IMG/VR virus record: IMGVR_UViG_3300010389_000001
Span: 168,534-232,533 of that record
Direction: 5' to 3' (one strand)
Length of the DNA: 64,000 nt
Part shown: positions 11,131 through 34,100 of the stretch, piece by piece
Layout: each line of letters begins with the position of its first letter
Numbering within the stretch: position 1 is the first letter of the stretch
Program-made: the position numbers and the translations under genes
Notes under the pieces: generated by a model
Seen by the model: only the letters and a program-made list of their open reading frames with translations
What the model was told of the DNA's origin: nothing
Databases searched by the model: none

Positions 11131-14100
11131 ATGGCTAACATACCTGGAGTATCAGGATTTATACAGCCCGGAGCTTTTGCCAGAGATAGAGTTATCTCCA
11201 GGGGCGTGTCTATTCCTGGTGGAATTAGAATAGTTTGTATTATGGGTGAAGGCCTTAGAGAAGAGACCATCATTGAGTCAGCCGCTGGCTTGGGTCAGGA
11301 TGGAAGCGCTGATTGCAGCCCTACCGGCTCCGCTGATGGAAGGTTCTTTAGACTCCAGAATTGGCCGGTTGTAAGCGGCAGAACAGAGCTTAGGCTAAAT
11401 GGAACTCTTCTTTTTGGAAAAGAGGAGGAGATCGATGCCTCTGGTTTAGCTTCTCCGTTTGACTTTAGACTTGATCCAGAGACTGGCTGCATAGAGCTTA
11501 GAGGAGCTTCTATAGGCGACCAGGATGGAAAGGGCTTCTCTGCTTCCTCTTCAAATATCGGAACAGGAATTATCGTTGAGAATGATGACTGTGATCCGCT
11601 TGTTACACTCGATATCTTGGATGACTCCGCGCCAAGTGAGAGATGGACAATCAAGTGCGTATCTGTAGTCAGAGATTCTAACGGCGACCCCATTCCTGGC
11701 CTGTCAACTTTCACGGCAACGGGCTCTGTCTCCGGCCAGATCTACGACGACTCAGGCGCTCCAATAACATTCACGAGCGGTTACTTCACTAGTAACGCTG
11801 GTGCGGTATCTGGAAATGTATCAGAGTGCGATGACGGCTTTACGGTCGCCTATGGTGACATCTCAGGCTCAGCCTTCCCACAGGGCCTCGTCAAGATTAG
11901 AGAGGGCGATACCTCTCTTGATACATCAAATACATTTATTGTCCCTGGAGCAGATCTTGTTTCACAGGGTCAGGCTCTTCCTGGCGATTTCCTTTGTCTC
12001 GATGGCTATGCGGGTCATGAGATCGAGTCAATTGACTATGACGGCAGCGACACCACTATCACGGTTATAAGCGACAGCCTTGGTCCTGCAGATCCTGCAT
12101 GGGGTGAGGAGCCTGACGACGCTCTCGATTGGACGATTAAGGCTACAAACATCTTAATCGATGACGACTCAGTAGCTCATGATGAGATTACTGGCGAGCC
12201 TGCATCAGAGGGAAGCTTCTCTTCCGGCGATATCGGCAAGACGGTTCTAATTTGCCCCGGCGGAGCTTTCGGCGGTGGCAGATTTGTTATAACGGATGTA
12301 ACTTCAACAAGAAGAGTTCGCTTAGTATCACTAGAGGATGATAGCGTATCATTTGAAGACCTAGAGGGTCTGGGCGCTACCGGCCTTGGTGCTACTGGCC
12401 TTACATTCCATCTGCTTCAGAACAACGGCCTGCTTCTTCTTGGAATTCAAGAGGGCGGAACAGCCTTTGAGGTTGGCGATAAGTTCTTTGTTGATGTAAG
12501 CTCAAGAGCATTAGCTCAGGGCGACAATCTGGTTGCCAAGTATATCTACGAGTTGGACCTAAATGATCCTCAGTTCTTTACTGAGGCAAACGATCTATTC
12601 CTAAAGCACGGACTTGTATCAGAGGAGAACACACTATCCCTGGGTGCTCAGCTGGCGCTTGAGAACGGAGCGCCTGGCGTGCTAGCAGTACAGTGTAAGC
12701 CGGCCGTTCCAAGAAGAACGTCCGTAACCCTCCTAGAAGAAAGAGATTCTCTCGGAAATGGTGGATTCTCTGCATGTTATGATGCCGGCACTGAGTCAGC
12801 AGATGCATGTGAGGTCGATGATCTCAGATTCGTTATCCCGAGACCAACGGAGGGCCTTAGAAACGGCCGTCCCGATCCGGATTCCAGAGTCAACATTTTT
12901 GTTGTAAGAGATGGAGCAGAAACTCAGGTATTCCCTAACAAGGTTGCTTTCTATAACTCCCAGCTTGAGACAGATATCCAGCAGGGTCAGTGGATTGCAA
13001 GCTCTGACAATGCATTCTCTTACACAATTGTAAATTCAGAGACAGATATTCTTGCGAGCGGCGATAACGGAACACTCGATGTCGAGTCTGGCAGAGAATA
13101 CTTTACAACTCCAGAGATTGATTTCGACGGAGCAAATGTCGGCGACGTAATTGTCATAACGAGCATGGAAGATGCCTCTGGAACAGTATACACTTCAGTC
13201 GAAGAAATATCTGAGCAGCTATTCGGAGTAGCTCTCCTAGTGCCTTCAGTCGAGCTTCTGATTGATTCAGTTCAGGATGACTCATTGGTTTACGTTTCAG
13301 CAGAGAATGGCGAAACGCTAAATCTATTAAGCTCTTACTCAGACATCCAGTTCTTTGTAAAGGACCCTGCAAATACCAACGCAGACGATGCCTCACTCCT
13401 TCTGCACCGCGACCTAGTATCCAGCGGAGTAATCAGAGAGGGTGATGGAATCAGAATCTCCTATGTAGATGAGAACGATGCAGACTTCTTCGATACAAAT
13501 TGGTTTGAGGCACTTGAAGCACTTGAGGCTTCAGAGGCACAGATTGTTGTACCGCTTCCGAACCAGGCTATTTCATCAATCTTTAGAGCTACTGTAAACC
13601 ACTGTGAAAACATGAGTTCTATTGTAAATAGAAAGGAAAGAGTTGCATTTATTGGAGCCCAGAGAGGAGTTACTCCGGCCGCATTGATTGGAACTGAAGA
13701 AGTTGCTGTTGAAGATATCGGTATAATTGAGGGAATTCAGGGAGATGATCCGGAAGAGGTTCTCGCAGGAAATACCGAAGACCTAGTCAACTTTAAGTTA
13801 AGCGATAATTACACCAGCAACAGATGCGTCTATCTCTACCCAGATGAGATCGTAAGAAATGTAAATGGAACAAATGTTTCTCTGCATGGATTCTACGCAG
13901 CTGCAGCTGCCGCAGGATATCTTTCTGCAAGACAGAATGTTGCAATACCTCTGACGAACAAGGTTCTTTCTGGATTCTCACTAACCAGAGATAAGATCTT
14001 TAGACCGATTATACAGAATCAGCTTGGCGCCGTTGGAGCTACCCTGCTTCAGCCTGTAGCGGGCGGCGGAAGAGTTCTCGCAGGAAGAACTACCAGCCAG

Positions 14101-14406
14101 TCAGGGTTCGTAGAGGACGAGGAGATCTCAATTATATTCATCAGGGATTTCGTAAAGAGAGCGTTGAGAAACTCTCTTGCAGGCTTTATCGGCGGAGTCC
14201 AGAACCCCGACGTAAATCTTCTTATATCACAGAGAACAAGATCAATTATGTCAGGGCTGGTAAGCCAGGGCCTCGTAACCGTCTTTGACAACATTAAGGT
14301 TGAGCAAGATAAGGTTGACCCAAGGCAGATAAATGTGTTCCTCCGATTTACACCGGCGTACCCCATTAACTACGTATTCATCGACATTGAGGTCGGCATA
14401 ATCTAA
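11131..14406 (+). CDS. contractile tail sheath protein (enlarged, 1091 aa)
   Basis: N-terminus PGVSGFIQPGAFARD and C-terminal sheath signature (EEISIIFIRDFVKRALR...VEQDKVDPRQINVFLRFTPAYPINYVFIDIEV); strong SD; upstream of a tube gene. Confidence 0.9.
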   Translation: MANIPGVSGFIQPGAFARDRVISRGVSIPGGIRIVCIMGEGLREETIIESAAGLGQDGSADCSPTGSADGRFFRLQNWPVVSGRTELRLNGTLLFGKEEEIDASGLASPFDFRLDPETGCIELRGASIGDQDGKGFSASSSNIGTGIIVENDDCDPLVTLDILDDSAPSERWTIKCVSVVRDSNGDPIPGLSTFTATGSVSGQIYDDSGAPITFTSGYFTSNAGAVSGNVSECDDGFTVAYGDISGSAFPQGLVKIREGDTSLDTSNTFIVPGADLVSQGQALPGDFLCLDGYAGHEIESIDYDGSDTTITVISDSLGPADPAWGEEPDDALDWTIKATNILIDDDSVAHDEITGEPASEGSFSSGDIGKTVLICPGGAFGGGRFVITDVTSTRRVRLVSLEDDSVSFEDLEGLGATGLGATGLTFHLLQNNGLLLLGIQEGGTAFEVGDKFFVDVSSRALAQGDNLVAKYIYELDLNDPQFFTEANDLFLKHGLVSEENTLSLGAQLALENGAPGVLAVQCKPAVPRRTSVTLLEERDSLGNGGFSACYDAGTESADACEVDDLRFVIPRPTEGLRNGRPDPDSRVNIFVVRDGAETQVFPNKVAFYNSQLETDIQQGQWIASSDNAFSYTIVNSETDILASGDNGTLDVESGREYFTTPEIDFDGANVGDVIVITSMEDASGTVYTSVEEISEQLFGVALLVPSVELLIDSVQDDSLVYVSAENGETLNLLSSYSDIQFFVKDPANTNADDASLLLHRDLVSSGVIREGDGIRISYVDENDADFFDTNWFEALEALEASEAQIVVPLPNQAISSIFRATVNHCENMSSIVNRKERVAFIGAQRGVTPAALIGTEEVAVEDIGIIEGIQGDDPEEVLAGNTEDLVNFKLSDNYTSNRCVYLYPDEIVRNVNGTNVSLHGFYAAAAAAGYLSARQNVAIPLTNKVLSGFSLTRDKIFRPIIQNQLGAVGATLLQPVAGGGRVLAGRTTSQSGFVEDEEISIIFIRDFVKRALRNSLAGFIGGVQNPDVNLLISQRTRSIMSGLVSQGLVTVFDNIKVEQDKVDPRQINVFLRFTPAYPINYVFIDIEVGII

Positions 14407-14429: not shown

Positions 14430-14467
14430 CCCCCCGGTACAATAGTGCCAGGGGGTTTTTTTGTTTT
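14430..14467 (+). terminator. intrinsic terminator after the sheath gene, overlapping the start signals of the next gene
   Basis: CCCCCCGGTAC-AATA-GTGCCAGGGGG stem-loop followed by TTTTTTTGTTTT. Confidence 0.75.
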
Positions 14468-16206
14468 ACGCAAAATGTTACGAATGCAATTCCAAGATGG
14501 AATATGCAAGAAAAAACGCTGCAGCTAGAGCTGAAAAAAACAAGATAGTATGCAAGACCTGTAAGAAAAGAAAAAAGGAAGCAAGAGAGAGGGCTTGCCC
14601 ATCTTGTAGTTGCCCTATAATATACAAGACATATGCCGGCTTTAAAAAGGGCGAGGAAAGTGATGCGCTATGCCCTTCTTGTGCAAAGCTTACACAATAT
14701 GAAGCTAGGCATTCAATTAAATGCTCAGAGTGTTCGGGGACACACTTTGTAAAGAGAGAAGAAACTTTAAAGAAAATGAGCAAAATGAGTCAGCCTTTTA
14801 TCTGCGGAAGCTGCAAGAAAAAGGCCAGACTAAGCATTGTTTACTCTAGAGATTGCGTAACTTGCGGTAAAAGCATAACTTATAAGAACAAATATAATTA
14901 TAATGCATCAATTAAAAGAAGCAAAAAAGCAAGGTGCGCTTCCTGCGCTCGCACGAATGGCTTCGTACTTCCCATGGAAAGGCCATGTCCAAAATGTAAT
15001 AAGATTATTCATTATAAAACAAAAGATAGCTGCGCGAGAGCCAATAAGCATGACTCGTTCTGCAAGTCCTGCGCACTGTCCGGAAGAATGCCTTCCGATC
15101 GAGCAATTGAGGCTGCGAGAAAAGCAAGGATCGGCAGAGTTGCCTCTCCTGAGGAGCTTAAAAGAAAGGAGGCAACTCTTCTTGAGAAATATGGGGCAAA
15201 AAGCTACCTTGGAACTGACGCTCACAGAAGGATGATGGTTGATTCTGGAGCGTGGAAAGACTATGACGGAAAAACAATAAAGCAAATAGCTAATGAAAAT
15301 GGTCTTCCAGAAAGCGTTCATTCTTCTCTATACAAATGGGTTGCAAGCTCTGATGAAATAAGCTATGATGATATAGCAGAATATTGCAGCAGTTATGAGA
15401 AGAAAATAAGCAACCTAGAAAATCTGGCGTCATTAGCCCTTGGCATCGATCATTTTAATAAAAAAATAAGTGAAGAATTGCCCTATAGGCCAGACTTTAA
15501 GATAAGTGATAAAATATTTTTAAATGTCGATGGCCTTTACTGGCATTCGGAACTTCACTCCGATAGGAAATATCATTTTGATATGAGGAAGAGTTATGAG
15601 GAAGCTGGCCTTAGGATAATTCAGTTCAGAGAAGACGAAGTTAATAAAAAAATGCATATTATCAAATCTATGATAGATAATGCTAGCGGACTTATTAAGA
15701 GTAAGATAGGCGCCAGAAAGTGTAAGATCGCCAAGCCTACGACCGATGAGGCAGAGTCTTTTCTGAGAGAGAACCACATCAAGGGCTACATTACATCGAG
15801 GCATTTGGGCTTATATTATAATGATCAGCTTGTTTCGCTAATGTCGTATAAGCTAAGAAAATCATATGTAAAAATAGACAGATTCTGCTCTAAGGCCGGC
15901 TGGTCTGTGCAGGGAGGGTTCTCTAGATTATTCAAAGAGGTTGAGAGGCAAAATGATCAAGATCTGCCGATTCATTATTGGGTTGATCTCAGATATGGCA
16001 CTGGAGACTTTCTTTTAAGCCAAGGCTTTAAACTTGAAAAAGAAACCCTTGGATGGGAATGGACCGACTTTAAAAAGACTCATAATAGGCTTAAGTGCAG
16101 GGCAAATATGGATGATAGATGCCTCTCTCAGTCGGAGCATGCAAAAGAGCTGGGATTATTTAAAATATATGATGCAGGCCAAAGACTTTACATCAAAAAT
16201 AAATAA
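14461..16206 (+). CDS. free-standing homing-endonuclease-like protein (Zn-ribbon repeats, DUF559/VSR-like nuclease, Hef-like/GNAT-like C-terminal domain)
   Basis: Ten CxxC motifs in the first ~205 aa; NUMOD3-like SGRMPSDRAIEAARKARIG; nuclease core YRPDF...LNVDGLYWHS...GLRIIQFREDE; C-terminal IGARKCKI...FLRENHIKG...RFCS...GGFSRL...IYDAGQ. Basic composition, unlike the acidic flanking tail genes. TTG start inferred; the alternative is ATG 14497. Confidence 0.7.
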   Translation: MFYAKCYECNSKMEYARKNAAARAEKNKIVCKTCKKRKKEARERACPSCSCPIIYKTYAGFKKGEESDALCPSCAKLTQYEARHSIKCSECSGTHFVKREETLKKMSKMSQPFICGSCKKKARLSIVYSRDCVTCGKSITYKNKYNYNASIKRSKKARCASCARTNGFVLPMERPCPKCNKIIHYKTKDSCARANKHDSFCKSCALSGRMPSDRAIEAARKARIGRVASPEELKRKEATLLEKYGAKSYLGTDAHRRMMVDSGAWKDYDGKTIKQIANENGLPESVHSSLYKWVASSDEISYDDIAEYCSSYEKKISNLENLASLALGIDHFNKKISEELPYRPDFKISDKIFLNVDGLYWHSELHSDRKYHFDMRKSYEEAGLRIIQFREDEVNKKMHIIKSMIDNASGLIKSKIGARKCKIAKPTTDEAESFLRENHIKGYITSRHLGLYYNDQLVSLMSYKLRKSYVKIDRFCSKAGWSVQGGFSRLFKEVERQNDQDLPIHYWVDLRYGTGDFLLSQGFKLEKETLGWEWTDFKKTHNRLKCRANMDDRCLSQSEHAKELGLFKIYDAGQRLYIKNK

Positions 16207-16307
16207 TTTATATGAATATATTTTTGATGTAACAAATATCATTTTCTATTTATAATTATTTTATAGTAGATAAGCCTAGTTTCATCAACCTTAATTAGGA
16301 GAATATA

Positions 16308-16937
16308 ATGGCCGAATATCCAAATACAGGCACCATTTTTGATAATCCAGATAATGGCAGTAAAACAAGAACTGGCCTATCTACTCAGATTGTCGTCTAT
16401 GTAGAGGGCGAGCCGGTTGGTGCGATACAGTCCTTTAACGAAAGTCAGAACCGAAGCGTAAAGCCTATTTCTGAGGTCGGAACGGATGGCGTTATTGAGC
16501 TGGTGCCTAACCAGCCTGCAAAGATATCGCTTACCATCAACCGAATCGTGTTCGATGGCCTTTCTCTTCCGGAGGCTTTCTCAAGAGGATATCGCAACAT
16601 CCACGCTCAGAGAATACCTTTTGACATCGTTGTAATAGATAAATTTACTGGAGACGGAGATAACGCCGTAGTTACAACTTACCATAACTGCTTCTTTACG
16701 CAGCTTGGAAAGAACTACACTGTAAATGATTATACGATTCAAGAGAACGCAAGCGTTACAGCAGAGTTTATGTCATCCACGAGAGCTGGGGGCCCCGTTG
16801 CCGATAGCCAGGGCGTATCTGGCGCCAGAGAGATTCCTGGAAGACAGACAGATTCAGTGGAGCAGTCTGCAGATACCGGCGTAAGACGCGGCCCGCTTGA
16901 CTTCTCAGGGCTAATCTCCGCTGCATACGGCAGCTAA
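16308..16937 (+). CDS. tail tube protein
   Basis: Follows the sheath; SD AGGAG; motif IVVYVEGEPVGAIQSF...EVGTDGVIELVP...PFDIVVIDK...TYHNCFF...YTIQENASVTAE matches contractile-tail tube proteins. Confidence 0.85.
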   Translation: MAEYPNTGTIFDNPDNGSKTRTGLSTQIVVYVEGEPVGAIQSFNESQNRSVKPISEVGTDGVIELVPNQPAKISLTINRIVFDGLSLPEAFSRGYRNIHAQRIPFDIVVIDKFTGDGDNAVVTTYHNCFFTQLGKNYTVNDYTIQENASVTAEFMSSTRAGGPVADSQGVSGAREIPGRQTDSVEQSADTGVRRGPLDFSGLISAAYGS

Positions 16938-16959
16938 TTTTAGCAATAAATATTTACTG

Positions 16960-16993
16960 AAAAGCACCATCTTAGCATGGTGCTTTTTCTTTA
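16960..16993 (+). terminator. intrinsic terminator after the tail tube gene
   Basis: Perfect inverted repeat AAAAGCACCAT-CTTAGC-ATGGTGCTTTT followed by a T-rich tract. Confidence 0.85.
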
Positions 16994-16998
16994 TGCGG

Positions 16999-17004
16999 TA
17001 TAAT
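16999..17004 (+). promoter_or_regulatory. candidate -10 element for the chaperone/tape-measure genes
   Basis: TATAAT just after the terminator and upstream of SD AGGAG and ATG 17024; no convincing -35. Confidence 0.35.
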
Positions 17005-17023
17005 ATCCTAAATAGGAGTAACT

Positions 17024-17509
17024 ATGCCAAAGGTTAGAGCCAGTTTGTCTGATGGTAACCGCATGGAAGAAATGCAGGAGCTTTTATCACCAGAGGCTAA
17101 CGCCGAAGAGGATAGCGGTGATGTGGATCCCGCCAAAATTTCTGACCTAAAGAACCTGATTCTTCTAGGCAAATTAACAGAGACTGTAAGGATTGGTGGG
17201 TTTAGCTTTGAGCTATCAACTTTATCTGCAAATGAGCAAGCAGAAGTAATGAAGACTCTAATGAAGGCAGAAGAAATGGATAGGGTTCTGCATTCAAAGT
17301 CTATTGCAATCTCCTATTGTATAAAGAAAATAAACTCTGTACCCCTCTCTGAGCTTGCCGCTGAGCACCCCGGCGATAGCGAGGATGAAAGAAGAGTTGC
17401 CTTTGTACTGGATATGCAGACCACTTTGGTTGAGAAGATATTTACAGAGTATGAAGCTCTAGTCGCAAGGTCAGGACAAGAAGTAGGTTTTGATTCTGTA
17501 AAAAAATAG
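17024..17509 (+). CDS. tail assembly chaperone (gpG-like)
   Basis: Between tube and tape measure; 161 aa, acidic and helical; ends GTA AAA AAA TAG. Confidence 0.75.
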   Translation: MPKVRASLSDGNRMEEMQELLSPEANAEEDSGDVDPAKISDLKNLILLGKLTETVRIGGFSFELSTLSANEQAEVMKTLMKAEEMDRVLHSKSIAISYCIKKINSVPLSELAAEHPGDSEDERRVAFVLDMQTTLVEKIFTEYEALVARSGQEVGFDSVKK

Positions 17510-17943
17510 CAGCGGAGCCATACCACAGGCTCCGCTGGAAGTTATGCAAAATATGGGGCTGCAAAGTTGATGATCCAATCTTTAATGATATCAACAATGC
17601 CCAGTGGGCTTGGTACGCAAGCATGGTTGCTGCAGATCAGAAGGAAACTTATGATCTTTATCTAGACTTCTCTGAATATTTGGCTTCTTTCTGGAATGCA
17701 GAGGCTGTGCAAAAGATTAAGAGTTCAAGAGTAAGGCCCGAAGATCAAGGGTTCGCATCCGATGAGGAATTCGAAGAACAGGTGCTAACAGGAGCATTTA
17801 AGGAAAATGATATTGTTAAGGCTATAAAAGATAAGTATAAAAATACTAATTTAGCTGATAATAATATGGGCTCCAAGGAAAGAACGAGAAGACTGCCGAA
17901 GGACCTATCTGGGATCAGGGATTTATTCGGAGATAGCGACTAA
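17024..17943 (+). CDS. tail assembly chaperone frameshift product (gpGT-like, ~306 aa); includes the tracked ORF 17623..17943
   Basis: The -1 frame from 17506 reads IAAEPYHRLRWKLCKIWGCKVDDPIFNDINNAQWAWYAS and joins MVAADQKETY... without a stop; ATG 17623 has no SD; the stop overlaps the tape-measure start. Confidence 0.8.
17500..17537 (+). promoter_or_regulatory. programmed -1 ribosomal frameshift signal
   Basis: Slippery heptamer A AAA AAA (17500-17506) in frame before TAG, then a perfect 10-bp stem CAGCGGAGCC (17510-17519) / GGCTCCGCTG (17528-17537) with an 8-nt loop; the -1 frame is open through to 17943. Confidence 0.85.
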
Positions 17944-19862
17944 TGGCATTGGATAAAGAAAATCTGAAAGCATTAGGCCAAGGGTTAGATGCATTTACAA
18001 ATTCTGTAAAAACTGCCGAAAAAGCTTTGGGGGATTTTTTCGCCCTAGGCTCCAGAACCCCCAACAGCCTTGGGCCTGCGACTCCTGCTTTAAATGATCT
18101 GAAAAAAGCAATTCAGGGTGTGGGGCAAATCGCAACCGGTACTGCCGGCGCCATCGACGCAATGATTGACGGGCTGGGTTCTGGAGGCTCTGCTATTGGA
18201 GGCTTTTCTGGTGCCCTAGTCGACCTTACGTCGGGACTGGTAAATACGCTTCCTGAGGCTATAGTCGGTATGGCGGAGGTTGTCGCCGGAGCGTTTGATG
18301 GCCCAACGAAAGATCTAAGAGCTTTTGATGCGAGCATATTCGAGGTGGGCAAGAGATTCGGTGATCCAATTCAGTCATCAAAAGATTTTGCTGATGCAAT
18401 AAAAGCTATACCGGCGTCGGAATTTGGGCAGGCACTGTCATTAACAAGAGATGAGTTAAGTAAATTTTATAGCAGAGCGGCTCAATATAATTTGACTCAG
18501 GAGATGTTAAACGAAACTGTGTCAACAGGCATTGGGGAAACAAACCTTCTTGCTGCGGCTTATGCTTTTGGAGAGTCTGCAGCGATGGGTGCCGGTGAAA
18601 CAATGCGCCTGTTAGATACAATCATAAATAAACAGGGTGTATCGGCTGGTGAGGCGGCAGAGATGCTTGGCGTTTACTCAGGAGTCGCAAAAGAAGTTGG
18701 CATAGCGATAGACGATGTTGCTTCAACGCTTAATTCGGCAGTATCCCAGTTCTCTAAGCTTGGAATATCTGCAGATTTTGGTGCGCCAATCCTAGAGGGG
18801 TTCGGAAGAGTCGTCAAAGATATGGGGCTTGGTATAGATGAGGCAACCTCCTTGACCCAGGGGCTTGCCAGCGCACTTGGAGGGCTCACAACTGATTATG
18901 CGAATGCTTATGTCATGTTTCAAAGGGGAGGGCTAGATATCGGAGCGGGTGGGGGCGCCCTTGGGGCTTCTATAGGGCTTCAGGCAGAGCTGCTTAGGGC
19001 TGAGCAGACCGGTGATCAGGCGGCGATAGGTGCTCAGCTCGTCGGAGCGATGAAGGATACTCTGGCATCGTTTGGCGGAGGAAACATAGTTACTGTTTCT
19101 GAGGCCGCAGAGAGCCCGGAGCTACAAACTCAATTTTATACCCAGCAGCAGCTTCTTATGAATCAGTTTGGGATAAGGGATCAAGCTTCTGCGACGAGAA
19201 CTCTCGAACTCTTGGCCGAGATTGATGATGCAACACGATCAGGCAATATGGAGGCCAAAGAAGAGCTTCAGAAACAACTTGAAAATGAGGTAGAAGGAAG
19301 AGATAAGACTCTGGATGTTTTGGAGCAAATAAACAGAGAGATTGCGGCTCAAAGTAATCTGCTGGCTATTGCTGCCAGAGAGGACCTTGAAGCCTTATCA
19401 AATCTTGGTTTTGATATAGCAAAAGAATTTGCTTCGCCAAAAATTGCGGAGGCCGGATCGGCTGGAGTGGGGGCCATAGAGTCGGGAGGGGATTCGTTCC
19501 AGAGAGTTTTAGATTCAATAAGGAGCTTCTTTAGCTCCGAAGGTGCAGAGGGCAAGCTGGTGCAGGAGGTCGAAAAAAGGGGTGCGATTGCAAAGGCGGC
19601 TCAGGAATCAACTCCCGATGTAAATCTTACGAATAAGGAATTATCCGCCATATCGGCGAGAGTTGCCTTGGCGGACAAGCAGATAAGCAAGGAAGAATTT
19701 AAGGCTATTTTTAAAGAGGCTATTATAGAGGGCATTGCTTCTGGCGACAGGGACTTGTCAAATCTAAATGTTACAATTGATTTTGCAAACGAAGAAATGA
19801 GGAAGGTATTTAAGGGCGTTGGAGCTGCCGTTAAAGAAATTAGTGAAGTTGGGGGTCCATAA
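17943..19862 (+). CDS. tape measure protein
   Basis: Directly after the chaperone pair; 639 aa, Ala/Gly-rich and helical. Confidence 0.75.
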   Translation: MALDKENLKALGQGLDAFTNSVKTAEKALGDFFALGSRTPNSLGPATPALNDLKKAIQGVGQIATGTAGAIDAMIDGLGSGGSAIGGFSGALVDLTSGLVNTLPEAIVGMAEVVAGAFDGPTKDLRAFDASIFEVGKRFGDPIQSSKDFADAIKAIPASEFGQALSLTRDELSKFYSRAAQYNLTQEMLNETVSTGIGETNLLAAAYAFGESAAMGAGETMRLLDTIINKQGVSAGEAAEMLGVYSGVAKEVGIAIDDVASTLNSAVSQFSKLGISADFGAPILEGFGRVVKDMGLGIDEATSLTQGLASALGGLTTDYANAYVMFQRGGLDIGAGGGALGASIGLQAELLRAEQTGDQAAIGAQLVGAMKDTLASFGGGNIVTVSEAAESPELQTQFYTQQQLLMNQFGIRDQASATRTLELLAEIDDATRSGNMEAKEELQKQLENEVEGRDKTLDVLEQINREIAAQSNLLAIAAREDLEALSNLGFDIAKEFASPKIAEAGSAGVGAIESGGDSFQRVLDSIRSFFSSEGAEGKLVQEVEKRGAIAKAAQESTPDVNLTNKELSAISARVALADKQISKEEFKAIFKEAIIEGIASGDRDLSNLNVTIDFANEEMRKVFKGVGAAVKEISEVGGP

Positions 19863-20821
19863 TGGAAGGAATAGGTAGACAGACAATAATTTTCTTTTTG
19901 CCAAATGATATGGACGCTTTTTTGAGCGATCAGAGTCCAAGCACAAATTCAAGCAGCTTAAGAGATGAGAATGTTGGGTGGTTTAAGACTCAGCTTTATA
20001 TGAACCCTCAGAGCTTTGATATTAATGAAAAGAAATTTATTAAATCAGATCTAACAAAGGGCGGATTCGTAACCCAGTATTGGGGAGAGGATCTAACCAG
20101 AATAAGCATTGCTGGTACAACAGGTTCTTCTGGAATAGAGGGGATCAATGTTTTGCGCTCTATTTATCGTCATGAGCAGGGACAGTATAGAAAGCTGCTA
20201 GAAGATAGAAGAAATAAGCTGGCAGAAGAAGCCGCCACCATACAGGCGCAAGCAATAGCAGAGGCTCAGTCAAGAGAAGGCATCGGAGGATTCTTTGTTA
20301 ACGCTGCAGACTTGCTTACAGGAGGAGCTTTTACTCAGACGGTAGACGGTCTTCAAAATTCAGTTGAGCTAATAAGCAATGCTATAAATGGAGAATCTCA
20401 GATAGAAGGAAATACGTTTAGATCAATACCCACTCTTGCTGCACTTGCAACAAATGTAGATATGTATTATCAGGGCGAGTTTTTTAGGGGATATTTTGAG
20501 TTTTTTAACGTAAGAGAAAACTCTAATGAGCCGGGACATTTTAATTACAGCACAAGCTTTGTTGTTACGAGAAGAACGGGAAGAAGAAGTAACTTTATGC
20601 CATGGCATAGAAATCCTTTGGATGCTAGCGGAGTAGCACAAATGAGCAAGGGAGTTACGGAGGCAAAGGGAGATCCCCTGACGGGCGGTGATAACTTCTC
20701 CTTCCCCATTGGCGGATATGAGGAGGAAAATGCAAGACCGGAAGTTTCTATCACTCAGGATGTAGAAGCAGAAATAGATTTAGAAATATCCCTGCCGCAA
20801 AATAGGCCCGGCCAAGGCTAA
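19862..20821 (+). CDS. tail tube initiator / baseplate protein (gp48/gp54-like)
   Basis: After the tape measure; motifs LYMNPQSFDI...TKGGFVTQYWGEDLTRISIAGTTG and YYQGEFFRGYF...FNYSTSFVV resemble tube-fold initiators. Confidence 0.65.
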   Translation: MEGIGRQTIIFFLPNDMDAFLSDQSPSTNSSSLRDENVGWFKTQLYMNPQSFDINEKKFIKSDLTKGGFVTQYWGEDLTRISIAGTTGSSGIEGINVLRSIYRHEQGQYRKLLEDRRNKLAEEAATIQAQAIAEAQSREGIGGFFVNAADLLTGGAFTQTVDGLQNSVELISNAINGESQIEGNTFRSIPTLAALATNVDMYYQGEFFRGYFEFFNVRENSNEPGHFNYSTSFVVTRRTGRRSNFMPWHRNPLDASGVAQMSKGVTEAKGDPLTGGDNFSFPIGGYEEENARPEVSITQDVEAEIDLEISLPQNRPGQG

Positions 20822-28153: not shown

Positions 28154-31100
28154 ATGGCAAGCATTTTAGAGTTAATAGTCGGAGCTATTAATGAGAAAGA
28201 AGATTATACTTCTGTTGAAATAAACTGTGAGGATAAAGGCGGATCCGGCAAAAGCCTTTTCCCGCCAAAAGCGCTGGAGGTTTTATTCCCTGATCAGGGC
28301 AGCGAGAACATTGTGCCTCTTAATGGCGGCTCTGTTGTAAAGATACAGCTGGGTAGAGATATCGATCCCGAGTCATATGCCGGAGTTACCTCGAAGATAA
28401 GCAGCAAGCTCACAGGCATTGGAAGCCTAACTAACTTCGTAAGCAATAAAAGCACTCTAGCAGAAAGTGGATCAAGTCTGGCCGAACTTTATGTAAAGAT
28501 TAACAGCTTTCTTGAAAAGACTGGCTTTTTTCAAAAAAGCCTCAGGTCACTTGGCGTTCCTACTCTTGCCTTATCTTCTGTAATTTCCGAAGATATAGTT
28601 GACTTTGAGGATCTAGAATCAGAAATAGAAAGAACGAGATTACTTGGCGTGCGAAGCAATGAGTTATCTGTAATTGGTTCTTTTAAATTTATACCATTTG
28701 AAACTATTAAGCAAATTTATAAAATAGCAAAAGAGGGCTATGGATATAATGTATCCATATCAGGAAATACATTTTTTGAGATTGCAGAAAAGCTAGATTC
28801 AAATCCTGAAGATGAAGATATTTCAAAAGCAATTTTAAATATATTTCCAATACTCAGAATTGATGATGACTTTATTTTCGGCGATGATATTCAGCAGTTA
28901 ATTGGATACTACACTATATATAAAGATTCAATATACGTAAAAACTCCAGACTTAAGCGCTAGGGATTCTTCCGGTTATTCGATCAACCCATACGACATCG
29001 GCGTAGACAATGTGCAGGATTATGTTAACTTTGCCTTTGAAATGATCACGAGCGAGACAATAACTAGCTCTGGTTATGACGCAATAGCTTTTGATTACTT
29101 AGCTCCACCAAGCATAGAGGTTTTGGATCAAGATTACGAATTCCCGGCGATTAAGGAGAATGGAAGCATCTCTGTGGAGATTAGCGCTAGCGGAGCTGTA
29201 GATGGCGCCTCCTATTATCTTTCGCCAATAGATAAGGCAACTACTGCAAAAATACAGGGCGTTAAAAATGTAAGAAAAGTATCTGATGCCGTAGAATTTT
29301 TTACTGCGCCGAATCTAGCTGTTCCTTATTATTCAGATTCAGAGGGTTTGAAGCCAGTATTCGTTATGGACGACTCATTTACGTCGGATGATTTCGGAAC
29401 GAAGATTAACTACAGCTATACCAACGATGATATAAAAAAGCTTGGAGACCAAATCATTGTATCTCTTGCATCATCTAATATATTTGTTTCATCAACAGAA
29501 ACAGATATTGACAATTATGAAATTGAAATAAACAAAGAAACTATAGGCTTAAGCCAACTGGGCGTACCACTTTTTGTTAGCGAGGGAACCATAGGTGTAA
29601 CAAGCTCTCAATATTGCGGAATTGCAAACAGGCCTGATATATTTCTGGGAAGCAGAGAAGAAGATGCATCTTACAGGAGAAATGATAGAAAGTATTTAAG
29701 CGATAAAATTTACGCCTCGAAAGAGTTCTTTATGTCGCTAACTCCAAATATAGCCAGAGAAGAGCAAATACCAAAACTTTGGATAAAAGCTAAGGGCGGC
29801 CCTAGCAATGCGGATTCGAATGGGCGAAGATTTATAGAATTTGGTGAAGCACAAAATGGCTTCCTGGCCCTGGATGATTTTGGTAGCCCAAATGGAAATA
29901 CAGATGTAGAGTTTGCGTTATATGCTGTCGATAAGCTTGGGCAGATATCAAGAGCTTATGGGCCAAATATTGTCGTAACTAAAAATGAGGTGTTGACTCT
30001 TGGGGTAAGTCCCGATGGATTCAAGGATGATGGAGTTATTATTCAGGTAGGCTCTGCAATGCCCACCCTAACTATAGAGCTTGAAGAGTCAACCAAATTT
30101 GAATCTCTAGTTGCATGGAGCCAAAAGTCTGGTGGAATCAAGTTGTTTGAGATAAATCCATCGGAAGTAGATATAGTAAACACATCTAGTGGATTTACTA
30201 TATCATTTAATGGTATAAGCGTAGAAGAAGTAGTCGGAACAGCCAATGGAGTAGTTTGGCTTGAGATAAATGGATCTGAAAACCGTATTCAGCTCTTTAT
30301 TGCAGATCCGGACGTAACCTCTATTGACCAGCTCCCTGGTCCGCTAACAGAAAAAGTAGAGTTTATTGATCCTAATGGGCTAAAGGCAAAGAGATTTGGA
30401 AAAACAATTGACTCAATACCGATACTCCTAGATGGATCAAACGCTGAAATAACATTAAAGTATAAAAAGAAAATATTTAAGCAAGGCTCAGAAATTTATG
30501 CTTATTTTGCTTTCTGCAAAAATAAGGATGAGGAAAACTACAAAATACTATCCGAAGATGTATCACCTTTGACGGGGACTTCTGGAGGTATTTGCGAAGT
30601 CTTTCTAGATGGCCTTGGGTATTGGGTGCCAACAAATATAGAGTACAAGTTTGGCTCTAGTTATTTCAGCAGAATATCCAACAAGAAGGCTTTGTTGAAG
30701 TTTCCTGGTCCAGCCGGAAATATAAATATAAGTAGATTTGGAAGGTTTACTGGAAATAGTTTGCAGTCGCCAGCATGCATAATCCTGACAAATAGTAAGC
30801 TTAGCCCGGCGCAGGATGGATCATTTATATCATTAATCTCTGCAGATAATGAATATGCAAAAATATCCATAGGATCGAATACTAGTGTTGGCGAAGAAGA
30901 CAGAAAACCAGCATTCATAAATCCTCCCCATATCCTTGGGATGGTTGCCGGTATACCGGACTCTGATCAATTTGCCTCATCGTCTAAGGTTATGGGTGAT
31001 TATTTTCAAGATATAAGAGGCGTTAGTAATGCCGCCCAGATAAGTAATGAAGATGTGGTTGGGCCTATAATTACTTCTGATCGCCTAGATCGATTGGCCC

Positions 31101-34100
31101 TAATTTTCACTGGCTCAAACAATGAAAGAAGAGTATCGAAAGCTTACACTGCATATATAGGGTCAACAAGGGTAAGGAGAAGGCAGCGAGCAGGAAAGAT
31201 AAAAAGGATTTCCAGTGATGAAAACCTTCTCTTAATGAATCTAAAAAAGATAAAAGATGTAAGAGACGTAGGCTGGACCAATATCCGAATAGAGAAAGAA
31301 GATAAAAGATTTAATGTTAATTACGACTCTACCGTGTATAACGTATCGACGGTAAAGTTCTCATGCACTGGAGAAAATCCGGACCCAAACTGCTCAGAAG
31401 ATGAGGCTGACCCTGGAATAACAAAAACCGAAGGAAGTGGCAAGAACGCCATATCTGTACTAAGAAAAGAGAATAAATTTATTCTAGCGAATGATGGAGA
31501 AAATAAGCTCATATGCTCTGAGTCAGCAAATATATTCCCAGATGTAAATAACGGCGGGTTATCACCGTTGCCTTACTATCCCCAGTTTGATGGCACAAGA
31601 TCATTTAGCCTAGGAAGTTGCTCTGGAGGTGGCCTCCAAATATTTGATAAAGGGTCATCTTATGCTTACTTTAGAAATCCGATAAAAATATTTCCAGATA
31701 CAGATCTGCTTCTGAATTTATTTCTTACTGATACTGATACGGTTAACAATCCGTCAGGAGAGATGACCACTGTAAGAAAAAATGGGTCTATAACCGTTAG
31801 TAATAATCTTGACGAGCTAAAAGAAACTTATAACAAAATATCAGGGCAAGCAGATGAGGCGAACGCAAAGCTTGATGAGGCCAGTGCTAAGCTCGAAGAA
31901 GAAAGTCAGAATAGAGATCCCGACGGTCTAAGTCGAACAGAAGAGGAGATAAATCAGGATAAAGAAGATATTCAAAAGTCTAAGGAAATTTACACTGAGT
32001 CTGATGAAAGTGCGCAAGAAGGAATTAGCGCTGTTGAGAAAGCTGAGGCGGAGGAGGCGGCCGCACAACAGGTCCGAGATTCACTGGATCCAAATTCTCC
32101 AGAGGATATAGTGGCTAGCGCAGATGCTGCACTCAAAGATGCGCAAGATGCAGCAAATAAAGCTTTGAACGCAGCAAATGAGGCTGTAGACGGACTTAAC
32201 AACGCCCTCAATGTGCTTGAAAATCTGAATGATGAGCTATCAAGAAAGCTTATGATAGCAAACGGACTAATTAATGAAGCGGAAGATGCGCTAACGGTAT
32301 CAAGGTCCGATAGCTTCTATGGAGTTAGAATAGCTGATATGGCAATAAGCAAGACCGCCGCCATATCGACTGGCAACATTGATTCTTCAAATAAAAATGA
32401 GATATGGCTAAATATCAAAACAAGATTTGATCAGACTGCAGCAATAAAGTTTAACTCACCTGAGATTCTTTCAATAACAACTGATGGAAAAGATTTTCTT
32501 CCAGGTAAGTTCTCTGAGATAAAACTCGGTGATGGAAGAAATATACTTCTGCTTACAACGGTCGGAACAGACAGGAATACGAAATTAGAAATAAATAAAA
32601 TAAGAACAGACTTTACGATACAAAATGAGTTAGGCATACTTAAGGACTTATCTGTAATAATCGAGTCAAAAAATGAGTTCTTATTATCTGGATCAAAACC
32701 ATGTCTTGAGATTGCGCTAACAAATTCAAATCAAGAAAGGCTGCTTTTGTCGAATCTAGACAATAATTTGGCAATTGACCTTCAATCGACATATGAACGC
32801 TTTCTTATAGGCGGAGATAGAGTCAAGAAGGGCGTTCCGAGCACTCTAAAGGACACTCTAGCGGATAATCCTCTTAAGTTTATAAACGTTAGCTTGGAAA
32901 AGGCAAATATTCCAAAAGAATTTATGCAGAGCTTCTGCGATATGTCCTTCCATCTGACAGCGGAACTATCTCTTCAGCTTAGAAATTTTAGAGTTCTTCT
33001 TGTGCCAATCAAAGTAATCCTATGTATAGTTGATGTAATCTGTGCCTTACTTCACCCTATCCGGCTTGCATTCGCAATAATAAGACTATTCCTTTGCCTG
33101 TATGATTTAATCCTACTCTTGCCACAGCTTTCTGTGCCCGCCATGCTAATAAATCTGCTGCTGCATATTCTTGAGTTGTTACTTTGCGTAATTGTAAAAA
33201 TGCTAAGCATCGTTAACGCAATAAACGAAATAATATCAGCATTTGACGTTGCAATCAGGGATAAAAATTATCCGGCAATTATCGCTCTGGAGGAAACACT
33301 AAATGAGCATTTAGCCAGCTTGGAAGCAGATCTGGAGGTGCTTGAGCCTATCCTAACGATACTTGGATTATTCCTTGAGCTTTTGCAGCTTGTTTTCGCA
33401 TTCCCATGCCAGGTTGGATCAGATGAGGATGCGCCCTCCTGCATTGACCCCTCAATGATTGCCGGGATAATACTGAGCAAAGTTGCTCCATCTGGACGAA
33501 TAGAGCCAGACGCCCTACTTCCGATGGCTCAGACTTACACCACGCTTGACCCGGCAGATGGGACAAATGGAAATACTCCAAGCTCGGATAATGATAACGA
33601 CGAGGACAGATTTGGTAGAGTAGACGTTCTGAAAGAAGCCAAAGAAAATGTAGGAGCGACAGTTGTTCCTGATAATTCAGGCTATGGAGGAAGGGAGCTT
33701 ACAGGCCTAACGGATTCCCTGACCGGTGAGCCAAAAGTTATTGGAGAAGGAGGCTTCTTCTCCGGGGATAACGATGAGGATGGAAGGCACGATAACGTTG
33801 ATTATACGACACTTAGATTTGATGAAGGCGGAGATAACTTCCAGGCAACATTTGGTGTGTCATTTACAAAGTCGATAAAGAAGTTTAATCTTTTCACTGG
33901 ACCAGACCCAAGGCTTGTAACTTTCCAATTTAACGAAAGAGGCTTAACTAATCCATTGGCCTTTAACTGGTTCTTAGCAGCTTTCTTTAGAAAAAAGAAT
34001 ATAGACTTGTTCCAGACTCTGGATTCACCGCCGGGCTTTGTAATTCCAGATGGCAACTCCTTAATCGTCAACAGCGATCAAGTAGGCTTTACGTCACCAG

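What the first reader, a model, noticed from the sequence alone, without database searches (positions are those of the whole stretch)
17500..17622. Programmed -1 frameshift with a perfect stimulatory hairpin, missed by the ORF track
Seen: A AAA AAA before TAG, a 10-bp perfect stem 3 nt downstream, and a 39-codon open -1 frame (with W/C-rich HRLRWKLCKIWGCKVDDP) joining ORF 17623..17943 to give ~306 aa. Knowledge: lambda-type gpG/gpGT chaperones use this mechanism upstream of the TMP; T4 does not. Inference: this jumbo myophage keeps lambda/P2-style recoding; the 3-nt spacer is shorter than the usual 5-9 nt.
Basis: partly seen in the sequence, partly recalled or inferred. Interest (0 to 1): 0.68.

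Follow-up and report, generated by a model that had tools for sequence, protein, structure and literature searches.

The report
Tail chaperone frameshift with stimulatory hairpin
An uncultured aquatic jumbo phage almost certainly makes a short and a long tail-assembly chaperone from one gene by a programmed -1 ribosomal slip, the recoding known from lambda, P2 and Bacillus phage G, here helped by an unusually strong RNA hairpin placed unusually close to the slip site.

Summary
A_AAA_AAA (17500-17506) lies in the frame of a 161-codon ORF. TAG follows at once. A perfect 10-bp stem starts 3 nt after the heptamer. The -1 frame stays open to 17943, giving a 306-aa fusion.

The genes run sheath, tube, this pair, tape-measure candidate. 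The upstream ORF models as the HK97 tail-assembly-chaperone fold. Both halves are homologous to Bacillus phage G gp181/gp182, an annotated and published frameshifted chaperone.

In 56 distinct relatives an in-frame X_XXY_YYZ heptamer sits zero or one codon before the stop. Five heptamer types occur, at two positions. The 39 codons between the slip site and the first ATG are conserved as protein, and no conserved start codon or ribosome-binding site precedes them.

The hairpin is more stable than synonymous recoding allows (z about -4) and shows compensatory changes. Only its 6-bp core is family-wide. The 3-nt spacing comes from outer pairs added in some lineages.

Verdict: a real, well-supported new member of the known G/GT-type recoding. 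It is not new in kind. The close, strong hairpin is a modest variant worth a reporter assay. No protein or frameshift efficiency was measured.

The parts
11131..14406 (+). Tail sheath gene (1091 aa)
   Evidence: phrog_2839 and phrog_279 'tail sheath', E 6e-15 and 5e-14. tblastn hits the sheath genes of Eggerthella phage LE2-3, Rhodococcus phage E3 and Bacillus phage G.
16308..16937 (+). Probable tail tube gene (209 aa)
   Evidence: phrog_985 virion structural protein, E 3e-12. It lies directly after the sheath gene in all relatives, and 207-227-aa homologues sit upstream of the chaperone in every locus. The name 'tube' rests on position.
16960..16992 (+). Intrinsic-terminator-like hairpin (A-tract, 11-bp stem, U-tract) between the tube and chaperone genes
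   Evidence: Fold. The same architecture with different stem sequences occurs in nearly all relatives. Its function is inferred.
17024..17509 (+). Chaperone ORF in the 0 frame (G-like, 161 aa), with an AGGAG Shine-Dalgarno 6 nt upstream
   Evidence: AF2 core pLDDT above 90. Best PDB match is 2ob9, the HK97 tail assembly chaperone (Foldseek prob 1.0; VIA Z 8.0), then YqbN 3klu, Z 6.9. BLASTP against phage G gp181 gives 1e-10.
17500..17506 (+). Slippery heptamer A_AAA_AAA
   Evidence: In relatives it is replaced by A_AAA_AAC, A_AAA_AAG, A_AAA_AAT, or T_TTA_AAA 3 nt upstream, always in phase.
17507..17509 (+). 0-frame stop TAG, which also forms the 3-nt spacer
   Evidence: The stop is at +7 in 53 of 56 distinct relatives and at +10 in the other 3.
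17510..17537 (+). Hairpin: 10-bp perfect stem with an 8-nt loop
   Evidence: It folds at -21.9 kcal/mol against -9.0 +/- 3.2 for synonymous recodings. Compensatory G-C / A-U / U-A changes occur at one outer pair.
17506..17943 (+). -1 frame extension (T-like, 145 codons after the two Lys), ending in TAA that overlaps the next ATG
   Evidence: It is homologous to the frameshifted part of phage G gp182. Third codon positions vary most in the -1 frame.
17943..19862 (+). Tape-measure protein candidate (639 aa)
   Evidence: Pfam TMP_3 below threshold in the window protein (E 0.005). TMP_3 matches 9 of 33 homologues (best 3.7e-5), PhageMin_Tail matches 4 and TMP_N matches 1. Its position directly after the chaperone pair is conserved.
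19862..20821 (+). Possible tail tube initiator / baseplate-proximal protein (319 aa)
   Evidence: Weak hits only: Pfam Phage_tail_tube_init E 0.0024 and phrog_1011 E 0.004.

Best explanation
Window 17024-17943 is the tail assembly chaperone gene pair of an uncultured aquatic jumbo myophage (232.5-kb record, estimated 68% complete). It is expressed as two proteins from one start codon. Most ribosomes read ORF 17024-17509 and stop at TAG, giving a 161-aa G-like chaperone. A fraction slip back one base on A_AAA_AAA (17500-17506) and continue in the -1 frame to 17943, giving a 306-aa GT-like fusion with the junction ...DSVKK-IAAEPY.... The GC-rich hairpin at 17510-17537 most likely resists unwinding at the ribosome's mRNA entrance while the two Lys codons occupy the P and A sites, and so raises the slip frequency. 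The adjoining stop codon may add a pause. By analogy with lambda, the shared G part would coat the tape-measure protein encoded next (17943-19862), and the T part would recruit the tube protein (16308-16937). Shown here: the sequence anatomy, homology, fold, synteny, protein-level conservation of the -1 segment, lack of an independent start, and stem stability and covariation. Inferred: that the slip happens, its efficiency, the stimulatory role of the hairpin, and the binding partners.
For: Anatomy.
Synteny: sheath, tube, pair, tape-measure candidate in the window and in all related loci.
Fold: the G-part model matches the HK97 chaperone 2ob9 (prob 1.0; Z 8.0 over 99 residues) and YqbN 3klu (Z 6.9), well above unrelated rows (Z 3.2 or less). 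BFVD hits include phage G gp181/gp182 and actinophage 'tail assembly chaperones'.
Homology: both halves match phage G gp181/gp182. The tblastn match runs straight across G's annotated junction. G's gp182 is a two-piece join named tail assembly chaperone, upstream of 'tapemeasure', and is described as a programmed frameshift chaperone in PMC12484599.
Relatives: 37 and then 80 IMG/VR loci match from residue 1 of the -1 translation. All 56 distinct sequences carry an in-phase X_XXY_YYZ, of five types at two positions, zero or one codon before the stop.
No independent start: the -1 frame opens only 3-66 nt upstream, and the first -1-frame start codon wanders from codon 2 to codon 104. Anti-SD pairing is -3.0 kcal/mol before those codons against -8.0 before true starts.
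Coding signal: codon-position variability in the 38 codons after the site is 0.33/0.27/0.51, the signature of coding in the -1 frame. The best-modelled and most conserved part of the T domain (residues 10-50) lies upstream of ATG 17623.
Hairpin: z -3.7 to -4.0 against synonymous recoding in the window, 25 of 56 relatives at z -2 or lower, and 93% below zero. 77% of cells are paired against 31-55% in slid controls, and 30 cells have changes on both sides against 13.5 +/- 4.2 in shuffles.
Not an indel error: independent contigs keep seven A.
Against: There is no protein, ribosome-profiling or reporter data, so nothing here measures the slip or its efficiency. The hairpin is not universal: it is weak or not significant in phage G, in the most distant clade and in much of the T_TTA_AAA clade, so it cannot be required for frameshifting in the family. 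Part of its complementarity follows from conserved Glu-Pro ... Arg-Leu codons. RNAalifold gave no consensus structure on the diverse alignment. A 3-nt spacer means about 3 outer pairs must already be open when the heptamer is in the P and A sites, so the effective stimulator may be only the inner 6-7 bp. The tape-measure identity of 17943-19862 rests on sub-threshold Pfam hits and position.
Confidence: 0.86

Rival explanations
1. Two separate genes. The second protein starts independently at ATG 17623 (106 aa) or another internal start, and the heptamer and open frame upstream are incidental.
For: ATG 17623 exists and is what an ORF finder reports. 12 of 56 relatives have their first -1-frame start codon at the same codon 41.
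Against: The 39 codons upstream of that ATG are conserved as protein from the window to phage G, including invariant W13, K17, D25 and W38, and show third-position variability. They form the best-modelled helices of the domain. First start codons are scattered over codons 2-104 and lack Shine-Dalgarno pairing (-3.0 against -8.0 kcal/mol at true starts; the window's ATG is preceded by no GGAG). The -1 frame is closed just upstream of the slip site in every relative.
Confidence: 0.03
2. Transcriptional slippage. RNA polymerase adds one A in the run of seven A, so a subset of mRNAs encode the fusion in one frame. The ribosome does not slip.
For: Homopolymer A runs are the known substrate for this. 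The outcome (the same fusion protein) is indistinguishable at the sequence level. 28 of 56 relatives have A7.
Against: Fifteen relatives use T_TTA_AAA (runs of only 3 T and 4 A), and 13 use A6 followed by C, G or T. These runs are shorter than those that support efficient polymerase slippage, which my own knowledge puts at usually 8-9 or more. All are perfect tandem-slip heptamers in the correct codon phase, a constraint that matters only to the ribosome. No RNA reads could be laid on the site, because only DNA contigs held it.
Confidence: 0.05
3. The frameshift is real, but the hairpin is not its stimulator. It is either a by-product of codon choice or an intrinsic terminator for antisense (minus-strand) transcription, with the complement of the A-run as its U-tract.
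For: On the minus strand the stem followed by CUA and U7 is picked up as terminator-like. These phages clearly use stem-plus-U-tract terminators. The hairpin is weak or absent in phage G and the distant clade, which still keep the slip site. Lambda's G/GT shift is low-level (30:1 in PMC5009743); that it needs no downstream structure is my own knowledge.
Against: There is no credible minus-strand gene in 64 kb; the only minus-strand ORF of 150 aa or more is nested in a larger plus-strand one. A 3-nt gap separates stem and U-tract. The stem is far more stable than synonymous recoding allows and keeps pairing through compensatory changes. Hairpins also occur with T_TTA_AAA and A6C/G/T sites, where the minus strand would have a poor U-tract. 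One divergent member (L095) has a different hairpin at the same place.
Confidence: 0.2
4. Assembly or sequencing error in a homopolymer. The true genome has a single uninterrupted 306-codon gene.
For: Homopolymer runs are error-prone on some platforms.
Against: The same two-frame arrangement with a stop at +7 appears in 56 distinct sequences from many samples, including sites that are not homopolymers. Independent contigs of two other studies cover the site with no gap.
Confidence: 0.01

Closest known systems
Bacillus phage G gp181/gp182 (jumbo myophage, 497 kb)
   Same: It is a homologue of both halves (BFVD). It has the same gene order in front of the tape measure, an A_AAA_AAC heptamer followed directly by TAG, and the -1 junction at the same aligned residue. 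It is annotated as a joined CDS and described as a programmed frameshift chaperone.
   Different: Identity is only 25-27%. G's T part is about 110 aa longer. G has no significant downstream hairpin (-6.2 kcal/mol, z +0.7). Its tape measure is more than four times longer and shows no detectable similarity.
Lambda gpG/gpGT (Levin 1993; Xu, Hendrix and Duda 2004, 2013, 2014, as summarised in PMC5009743)
   Same: A -1 slip occurs near the end of the chaperone ORF lying between the major tail protein and tape-measure genes. There are two products sharing an N-terminal part. The G part has the fold family of the HK97 chaperone.
   Different: There is no detectable sequence similarity. Lambda is a siphophage and its heptamer is G_GGA_AAG; as far as I know it needs no downstream structure. 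Here the host phage is a contractile-tailed jumbo phage, the heptamer is A_AAA_AAA, the stop follows immediately and a strong hairpin is present.
P2 gpE/gpE+E' and other myophage chaperone frameshifts
   Same: The -1 recoding sits in the sheath-tube-chaperone-tape measure module of a contractile tail. PMC5009743 notes an efficiency 2- to 3-fold higher than lambda's.
   Different: No homology was detected with the tools used. Genome size and lineage are unrelated.
E. coli dnaX tau/gamma frameshift
   Same: It has an A-rich Lys-Lys heptamer (A_AAA_AAG), a 3' stem-loop stimulator and a stop soon after in the new or old frame.
   Different: dnaX has a 6-nt spacer and an upstream Shine-Dalgarno-like stimulator (my own knowledge). 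Here the spacer is 3 nt, and an upstream SD-like element is not supported (window z +0.55 against synonymous recoding). The protein is unrelated.
T4-like phages (tail chaperones made without frameshifting)
   Same: The protein role is probably the same. BFVD lists 'baseplate hub assembly protein, T4-like' among weaker fold matches of the G part (ranks 10 and 39).
   Different: The G-T frameshift is reported conserved in long-tailed phages 'except T4' (PMC5009743). A 2022 Virology paper by Vladimirov, Gautam and Davidson, listed in the references of PMC10885494, proposes another mechanism. The window's phage uses the frameshift.

Membership tests
G/GT-type tail assembly chaperone with programmed -1 frameshift (Xu et al. 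2004 class) | Two overlapping ORFs lying between the major tail (tube) gene and the tape-measure gene | tested here: met
   The order sheath-tube-pair-TMP candidate holds in the window and all related loci. The TMP call rests on sub-threshold Pfam hits plus position.
G/GT-type tail assembly chaperone with programmed -1 frameshift (Xu et al. 2004 class) | [quoted passage not shown] | tested here: met
   A_AAA_AAA at 17500-17506 is one codon before TAG. All 56 distinct relatives have an in-phase X_XXY_YYZ.
G/GT-type tail assembly chaperone with programmed -1 frameshift (Xu et al. 2004 class) | The downstream ORF has no start codon or RBS of its own, and its conserved coding sequence reaches back to the slip site | tested here: met
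G/GT-type tail assembly chaperone with programmed -1 frameshift (Xu et al. 2004 class) | The upstream product has the tail-assembly-chaperone fold (HK97 2ob9 / YqbN 3klu type) | tested here: met
   Foldseek top PDB hit is 2ob9 (E 0.018, prob 1.0). VIA Z is 8.0 and 6.9, with the next unrelated rows at 3.2 or less. Pfam and PHROG sequence models gave no hit.
G/GT-type tail assembly chaperone with programmed -1 frameshift (Xu et al. 2004 class) | Both a short and a long product are made at a fixed ratio, and both are needed for tail assembly | not testable with these tools
   This needs expression, mass spectrometry and genetics.
G/GT-type tail assembly chaperone with programmed -1 frameshift (Xu et al. 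2004 class) | The G part binds the tape-measure protein and the T part binds the tube protein | not tested
dnaX-type stimulated -1 frameshift site | 3' stem-loop about 5-7 nt after the heptamer | tested here: inconclusive
   The stem is present and selected but starts 3 nt after the heptamer. Its conserved 6-bp core starts 7 nt after.
dnaX-type stimulated -1 frameshift site | Upstream Shine-Dalgarno-like stimulator about 10-14 nt before the heptamer | tested here: not met
   Anti-SD pairing upstream of the site is no better than in synonymous recodings (window -6.0 kcal/mol, z +0.55; family mean z -0.3).
Transcriptional-slippage site | A long homopolymer run conserved as a run | tested here: not met
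   There are seven A in the window. Half the relatives have runs of 4-6, and what is conserved is the codon phase of a tandem-slip heptamer.
Rho-independent terminator (minus strand) | GC-rich stem directly followed by a U-tract, at the end of a transcription unit | tested here: inconclusive
   The pattern scan lists it. However, there is a 3-nt gap, no minus-strand gene, and a poor U-tract in the T_TTA_AAA clade.
Any Rfam RNA family | Match to a curated covariance model | tested here: not met
   No match at E of 1 or less in 16900-18000.

The most novel reading that the evidence does not exclude
In the window's lineage the stem has been extended outward until it abuts the stop codon. The 3-nt spacer recurs in 13 of the 25 family members with a significant hairpin (56 distinct members in all). 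This arrangement could set a much higher long:short chaperone ratio than lambda's roughly 1:30. It could also shift the mechanism toward a termination-coupled slip, in which the ribosome is held on AAA-TAG by a hairpin already partly inside the mRNA channel. On that reading the family would be a natural series of one slip site with tunable stimulators: heptamer type, heptamer position, and stem length from 0 to 12 bp. The same stem plus the A-run might also double as an antisense terminator.
Probability: 0.15. Interest if true: 0.5.

Novelty: new member of a known kind. Interest (0 to 1): 0.3.

Why it matters
For annotation, the 306-aa fusion should be recorded as a joined CDS in this record and in dozens of related uncultured aquatic jumbo-phage contigs, where gene callers report a 161-aa ORF and a truncated 106-aa ORF or none. 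It fixes the identity of the neighbouring tube and tape-measure genes in a lineage whose structural proteins have almost no database names.

For recoding biology, the family offers a ready-made comparative series. It contains five heptamer types at two positions and hairpins from absent to 12 bp, with spacers of 3 to 10 nt, all serving the same protein junction. That series could be used to test how spacer and stem strength set frameshift efficiency on bacterial ribosomes.

It does not change the known picture that long-tailed phages other than T4 use this device.

Tried and rejected
- Megablast of 16300-19900 against 50,697 phage records gave no match.
- tblastn of the G part against phages gave no match. 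Only the T part found phage G.
- Pfam and PHROGs gave nothing for either half.
- A profile of the G-part family against PDB sequences gave nothing meaningful (E 1.6). The chaperone assignment therefore rests on fold and on homology to phage G.
- The search for related loci with the G part found nothing, because no exact 8-mers were shared. The G parts of relatives were taken from loci found with the T part.
- RNAalifold on the 25-sequence diverse alignment predicted no consensus pairs. The stem was then tested with a named structure and with per-sequence folds.
- An upstream Shine-Dalgarno-like stimulator is not supported. The distant clade has AGGAGG 12-14 nt upstream, but no more than synonymous recoding gives (z about -1.2).
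- A pseudoknot was not tested formally. Loop sequences differ freely among relatives, which argues against a conserved loop-downstream pairing.
- BLASTP of the tape-measure candidate against phage G gp183 showed no similarity.
This gives no verdict on binding.
- The T-part model is only moderate (pLDDT 66), and its BFVD matches beyond gp182 are weak.
- No RNA run held the site, so expression and transcript heterogeneity could not be examined.
- T_TTA_AAA at 61243, one codon before a stop with the next ORF in the -1 frame, was considered as a second recoding site and rejected. The next ORF has its own ATG in an ATGA overlap.
No alternative genetic code was used. Read laying was given 3,601 letters.
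Full report
**1. What is in the sequence**

The ORF 17024-17509 (161 codons, AGGAG 6 nt before its ATG) ends GTA AAA AAA TAG.
- The seven A at 17500-17506 are an A_AAA_AAA tandem-slip heptamer in the correct phase.
- TAG (17507-17509) follows directly.
- Bases 17510-17519 pair perfectly with 17528-17537 around an 8-nt loop. The fold is -23 kcal/mol, z -3.2, and none of 200 dinucleotide shuffles is as stable.
- From 17500 the -1 frame reads KKIAAEPYHRLRWKLCKIWGCKVDDP... and stays open to TAA at 17941-17943.
- The first ATG, GTG or TTG in that frame is ATG 17623, 39 codons after the slip point.
- A slip would give 161 + 145 = 306 aa.

A heptamer by itself is not remarkable here. There are 95 in-phase X_XXY_YYZ sites in about 19,900 codons of this 40% G+C window. 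The case rests on the combination of features and on the comparative evidence below.

**2. Context**

The window is the last 64 kb of a 232,533-bp IMG/VR virus record, estimated 68% complete. It is one long plus-strand structural module with ORFs of up to 3,245 codons. Around the finding the order is:
- 11131-14406, tail sheath (PHROG tail sheath, E 6e-15).
- 14461-16206, an HNH/homing-endonuclease ORF.
- 16308-16937, probable tube protein.
- A terminator-like hairpin.
- The ORF pair.
- 17943-19862, a 639-aa protein whose ATG overlaps the TAA of the -1 frame.
- 19862-20821, with a weak 'tail tube initiator' hit.

The 639-aa protein has only a sub-threshold TMP_3 hit. Among 33 homologues, 9 hit TMP_3 (best E 3.7e-5), 4 hit PhageMin_Tail and 1 hit TMP_N. 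I take it as the tape-measure protein, with moderate confidence.

The endonuclease ORF is absent from every related locus. There the sheath gene ends 15-45 nt before the tube gene. The ancestral order is therefore sheath-tube-pair-tape measure, the canonical place of the tail assembly chaperone.

**3. Identity of the two halves**

Sequence libraries were blank for both halves.

The -1 translation finds Bacillus phage G (497 kb) by tblastn at 27% identity, E 4e-6. The match runs across the boundary of G's gp181 and gp182.
- In the G record, gp181 is 'tail assembly chaperone'.
- gp182 is a two-piece joined CDS with the same name.
- gp183 is 'tapemeasure'.
- A 2025 multi-omics paper lists a 'programmed frameshift tail chaperone protein' there (PMC12484599).
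- G's site is A_AAA_AAC followed by TAG, and its -1 frame begins KKLASDTYSRIRWK..., which aligns residue for residue with the window.
- The 0-frame ORFs are also homologous (BLASTP 1e-10).

An AlphaFold model of the 161-aa protein was built on 24 family sequences. Its core pLDDT is above 90.
- Its best PDB match is the HK97 tail assembly chaperone 2ob9 (Foldseek prob 1.0; VIA-align Z 8.0 over 99 residues).
- YqbN (3klu) follows at Z 6.9. Unrelated chains score 3.2 or less.
- In BFVD it matches phage G gp181/gp182 and several proteins named tail assembly chaperone.

The T part models as helices with moderate confidence. The best-defined stretch is residues 10-50. Its top BFVD hit is G gp182.

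**4. Comparative test of the frameshift**

Two scans of IMG/VR found 37 and then 80 loci. These give 56 distinct sequences around the site. Nearly every match starts at residue 1 of the -1 translation, that is, at the slip site and not at an internal Met.

All 56 have an in-phase X_XXY_YYZ:

| Heptamer | Distinct sequences |
|---|---|
| A_AAA_AAA | 28 |
| A_AAA_AAC | 10 |
| A_AAA_AAG | 2 |
| A_AAA_AAT | 1 |
| T_TTA_AAA, 3 nt further upstream | 15 |

- The 0-frame stop comes zero or one codon later.
- The -1 frame is closed by a stop 3-66 nt upstream of the site.
- The first possible start codon in the -1 frame wanders between codons 2 and 104.
- Those codons are preceded by poor anti-SD pairing, mean -3.0 kcal/mol, against -8.0 for the true starts of the upstream ORFs.
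- In the 38 codons between the slip site and the window's ATG, mean pairwise difference by codon position is 0.33/0.27/0.51 in the -1 frame. The other two frames carry stops.
- That stretch holds four of the six invariant residues of the T part: W13, K17, D25 and W38.

This is the pattern expected if ribosomes enter the -1 frame at the heptamer. It is not expected for an independent gene.

Independent assemblies from other studies cover the site without an indel. Together with the non-homopolymer sites in relatives, this excludes a homopolymer sequencing error.

**5. The hairpin**

The stem lies inside conserved coding sequence (Glu-Pro ... Arg-Leu-Arg). I therefore compared each sequence with recodings that keep the -1-frame protein and draw synonymous codons at random.
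- The window's fold is -21.9 kcal/mol against -9.0 +/- 3.2 (z -4.0, -3.7).
- Its close relatives give z -3 to -4.7.
- Over all 56 sequences, mean z is -1.8, 93% are below zero and 25 are at -2 or lower.

With the window's 10 pairs imposed on the 56-sequence alignment:
- 77% of cells pair, against 31-55% when the 3' arm is slid.
- 30 cells carry changes on both sides, against 13.5 +/- 4.2 in shuffles (for the 25-sequence set).
- One outer pair occurs as G-C, A-U and U-A, through a silent change in an Arg codon matched by an amino-acid change opposite.
- One divergent member (L095) has a different hairpin at the same place.

The signal is uneven, however.
- The inner six pairs (GGAGCC/GGCTCC) are kept in most members.
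- The outer pairs at alignment columns 21-23 are unpaired in 40-67% of sequences.
- Phage G and the most distant clade have no significant hairpin.
- The conserved core starts 7 nt after the A-type heptamers and 10 nt after T_TTA_AAA.
- The 3-nt spacing arises where the stem is extended outward to the stop codon. It recurs in 13 of the 25 significant hairpins.

Mechanistically (my inference, from the usual 11-13 nt distance between the P-site codon and the mRNA entrance), about three outer pairs would already be open when the two Lys codons sit in the P and A sites. The next translocation would then have to melt the GC-rich core. Work in a eukaryotic system shows that shortening the spacer by 1-2 nt favours -2 over -1 shifts (PMC3458567). 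Here the +1/-2 frame is closed by stops, so any such events would be unproductive.

An upstream Shine-Dalgarno-like stimulator of the dnaX kind is not supported. No Rfam family matches.

**6. Rivals**

- Independent initiation and sequencing error are effectively excluded (section 4).
- Transcriptional slippage on A7 would give the same protein and cannot be excluded as a minor contributor. But half the relatives have runs of only 4-6 bases, and all keep the codon phase of a tandem-slip heptamer. Only the ribosome reads that phase.
- The hairpin might serve something else. On the minus strand, the stem plus the complement of the A-run is flagged as terminator-like, and these phages do use stem-plus-U terminators. 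Against this, there is no minus-strand gene, there is a 3-nt gap, and hairpins also accompany sites without a long A-run.
- I put about 0.2 on the hairpin not being a frameshift stimulator. I put about 0.86 on the overall G/GT-type -1 frameshift explanation.

**7. Comparison with what is known, and novelty**

The -1 frameshift that links a tail chaperone to a C-terminal extension is conserved in long-tailed phages 'except T4', according to the Atkins et al. review (PMC5009743). That review also gives lambda's 30:1 product ratio and P2's 2- to 3-fold higher efficiency.

The window meets every defining feature that can be tested in silico (see the membership table). The ratio of products and the binding partners remain untested.

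It is a new member of a known kind. The recoding is even annotated in a distant jumbo-phage homologue. What is slightly unusual is a strong, selected stem placed 3 nt from the heptamer with the stop codon as spacer. The family also forms a natural series of heptamer types, positions and stem strengths. That is worth a reporter assay but would not surprise a specialist. Interest: 0.3.

**8. Limits**

- There are no expression data of any kind. No RNA run held the site.
The two halves were folded apart.
- The host is unknown. Runs holding near-identical sequence are marine, sediment, freshwater and other aquatic metagenomes.

Noticed in passing
window 14461-16206 (+): A 581-aa HNH/homing-endonuclease ORF (phrog_3339 E 1e-38, phrog_559 E 5e-33) sits between the sheath and tube genes. 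None of 33 related loci has it. In nearly all of them the sheath gene ends 15-45 nt before the tube gene. It therefore looks like a lineage-specific insertion of a free-standing homing endonuclease into the tail module.
   Followed up: partly
window 16960-16992 (+), and the tube-chaperone intergenic region of L003-L039: An A-tract, an 11-bp stem and a U-tract form a hairpin of the intrinsic-terminator type right after the tube gene. Nearly every relative has the same kind of hairpin there with a different stem sequence. This suggests conserved attenuation of transcription between the abundant tube protein and the chaperone and tape-measure genes. The pattern scan did not list it.
   Followed up: partly
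window 17537-17500 (-): Read on the minus strand, the frameshift hairpin followed by CUA and seven U is scored as terminator-like. No minus-strand gene is nearby, so any role in stopping antisense transcription is speculative.
   Followed up: partly
outside the window: G000:C1:23814-53026: The same virus record carries seven tRNA genes (Arg-UCU, Leu-UAA, Met, Lys-CUU, Pro, Thr, Ala) and a tmRNA gene at 52650-53026 with tag ANNNYHYNSVALAA (aragorn). The phage tRNA-Lys reads AAG, not the AAA codons of the slip site.
   Followed up: no
window 61243-61252: T_TTA_AAA lies one codon before the stop of ORF 60317-61252, and the next ORF (61249-62115) is in the -1 frame. That ORF has its own ATG in an ATGA overlap, so this is ordinary translational coupling rather than a second recoding site.
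   Followed up: partly
L107-L118 (IMG/VR relatives), 12-14 nt before the heptamer: The most distant clade has an AGGAGG-like stretch upstream of its A_AAA_AAA site and only a weak downstream stem, reminiscent of the dnaX upstream stimulator. It is not significantly stronger than synonymous recoding gives (z about -1.2).
   Followed up: partly
window 28154-35998, 41866-51603 and neighbours (+): Very large structural ORFs (2,614 and 3,245 codons, several of 1,100-1,600) follow the tail module on the same strand. They were not examined.
   Followed up: no
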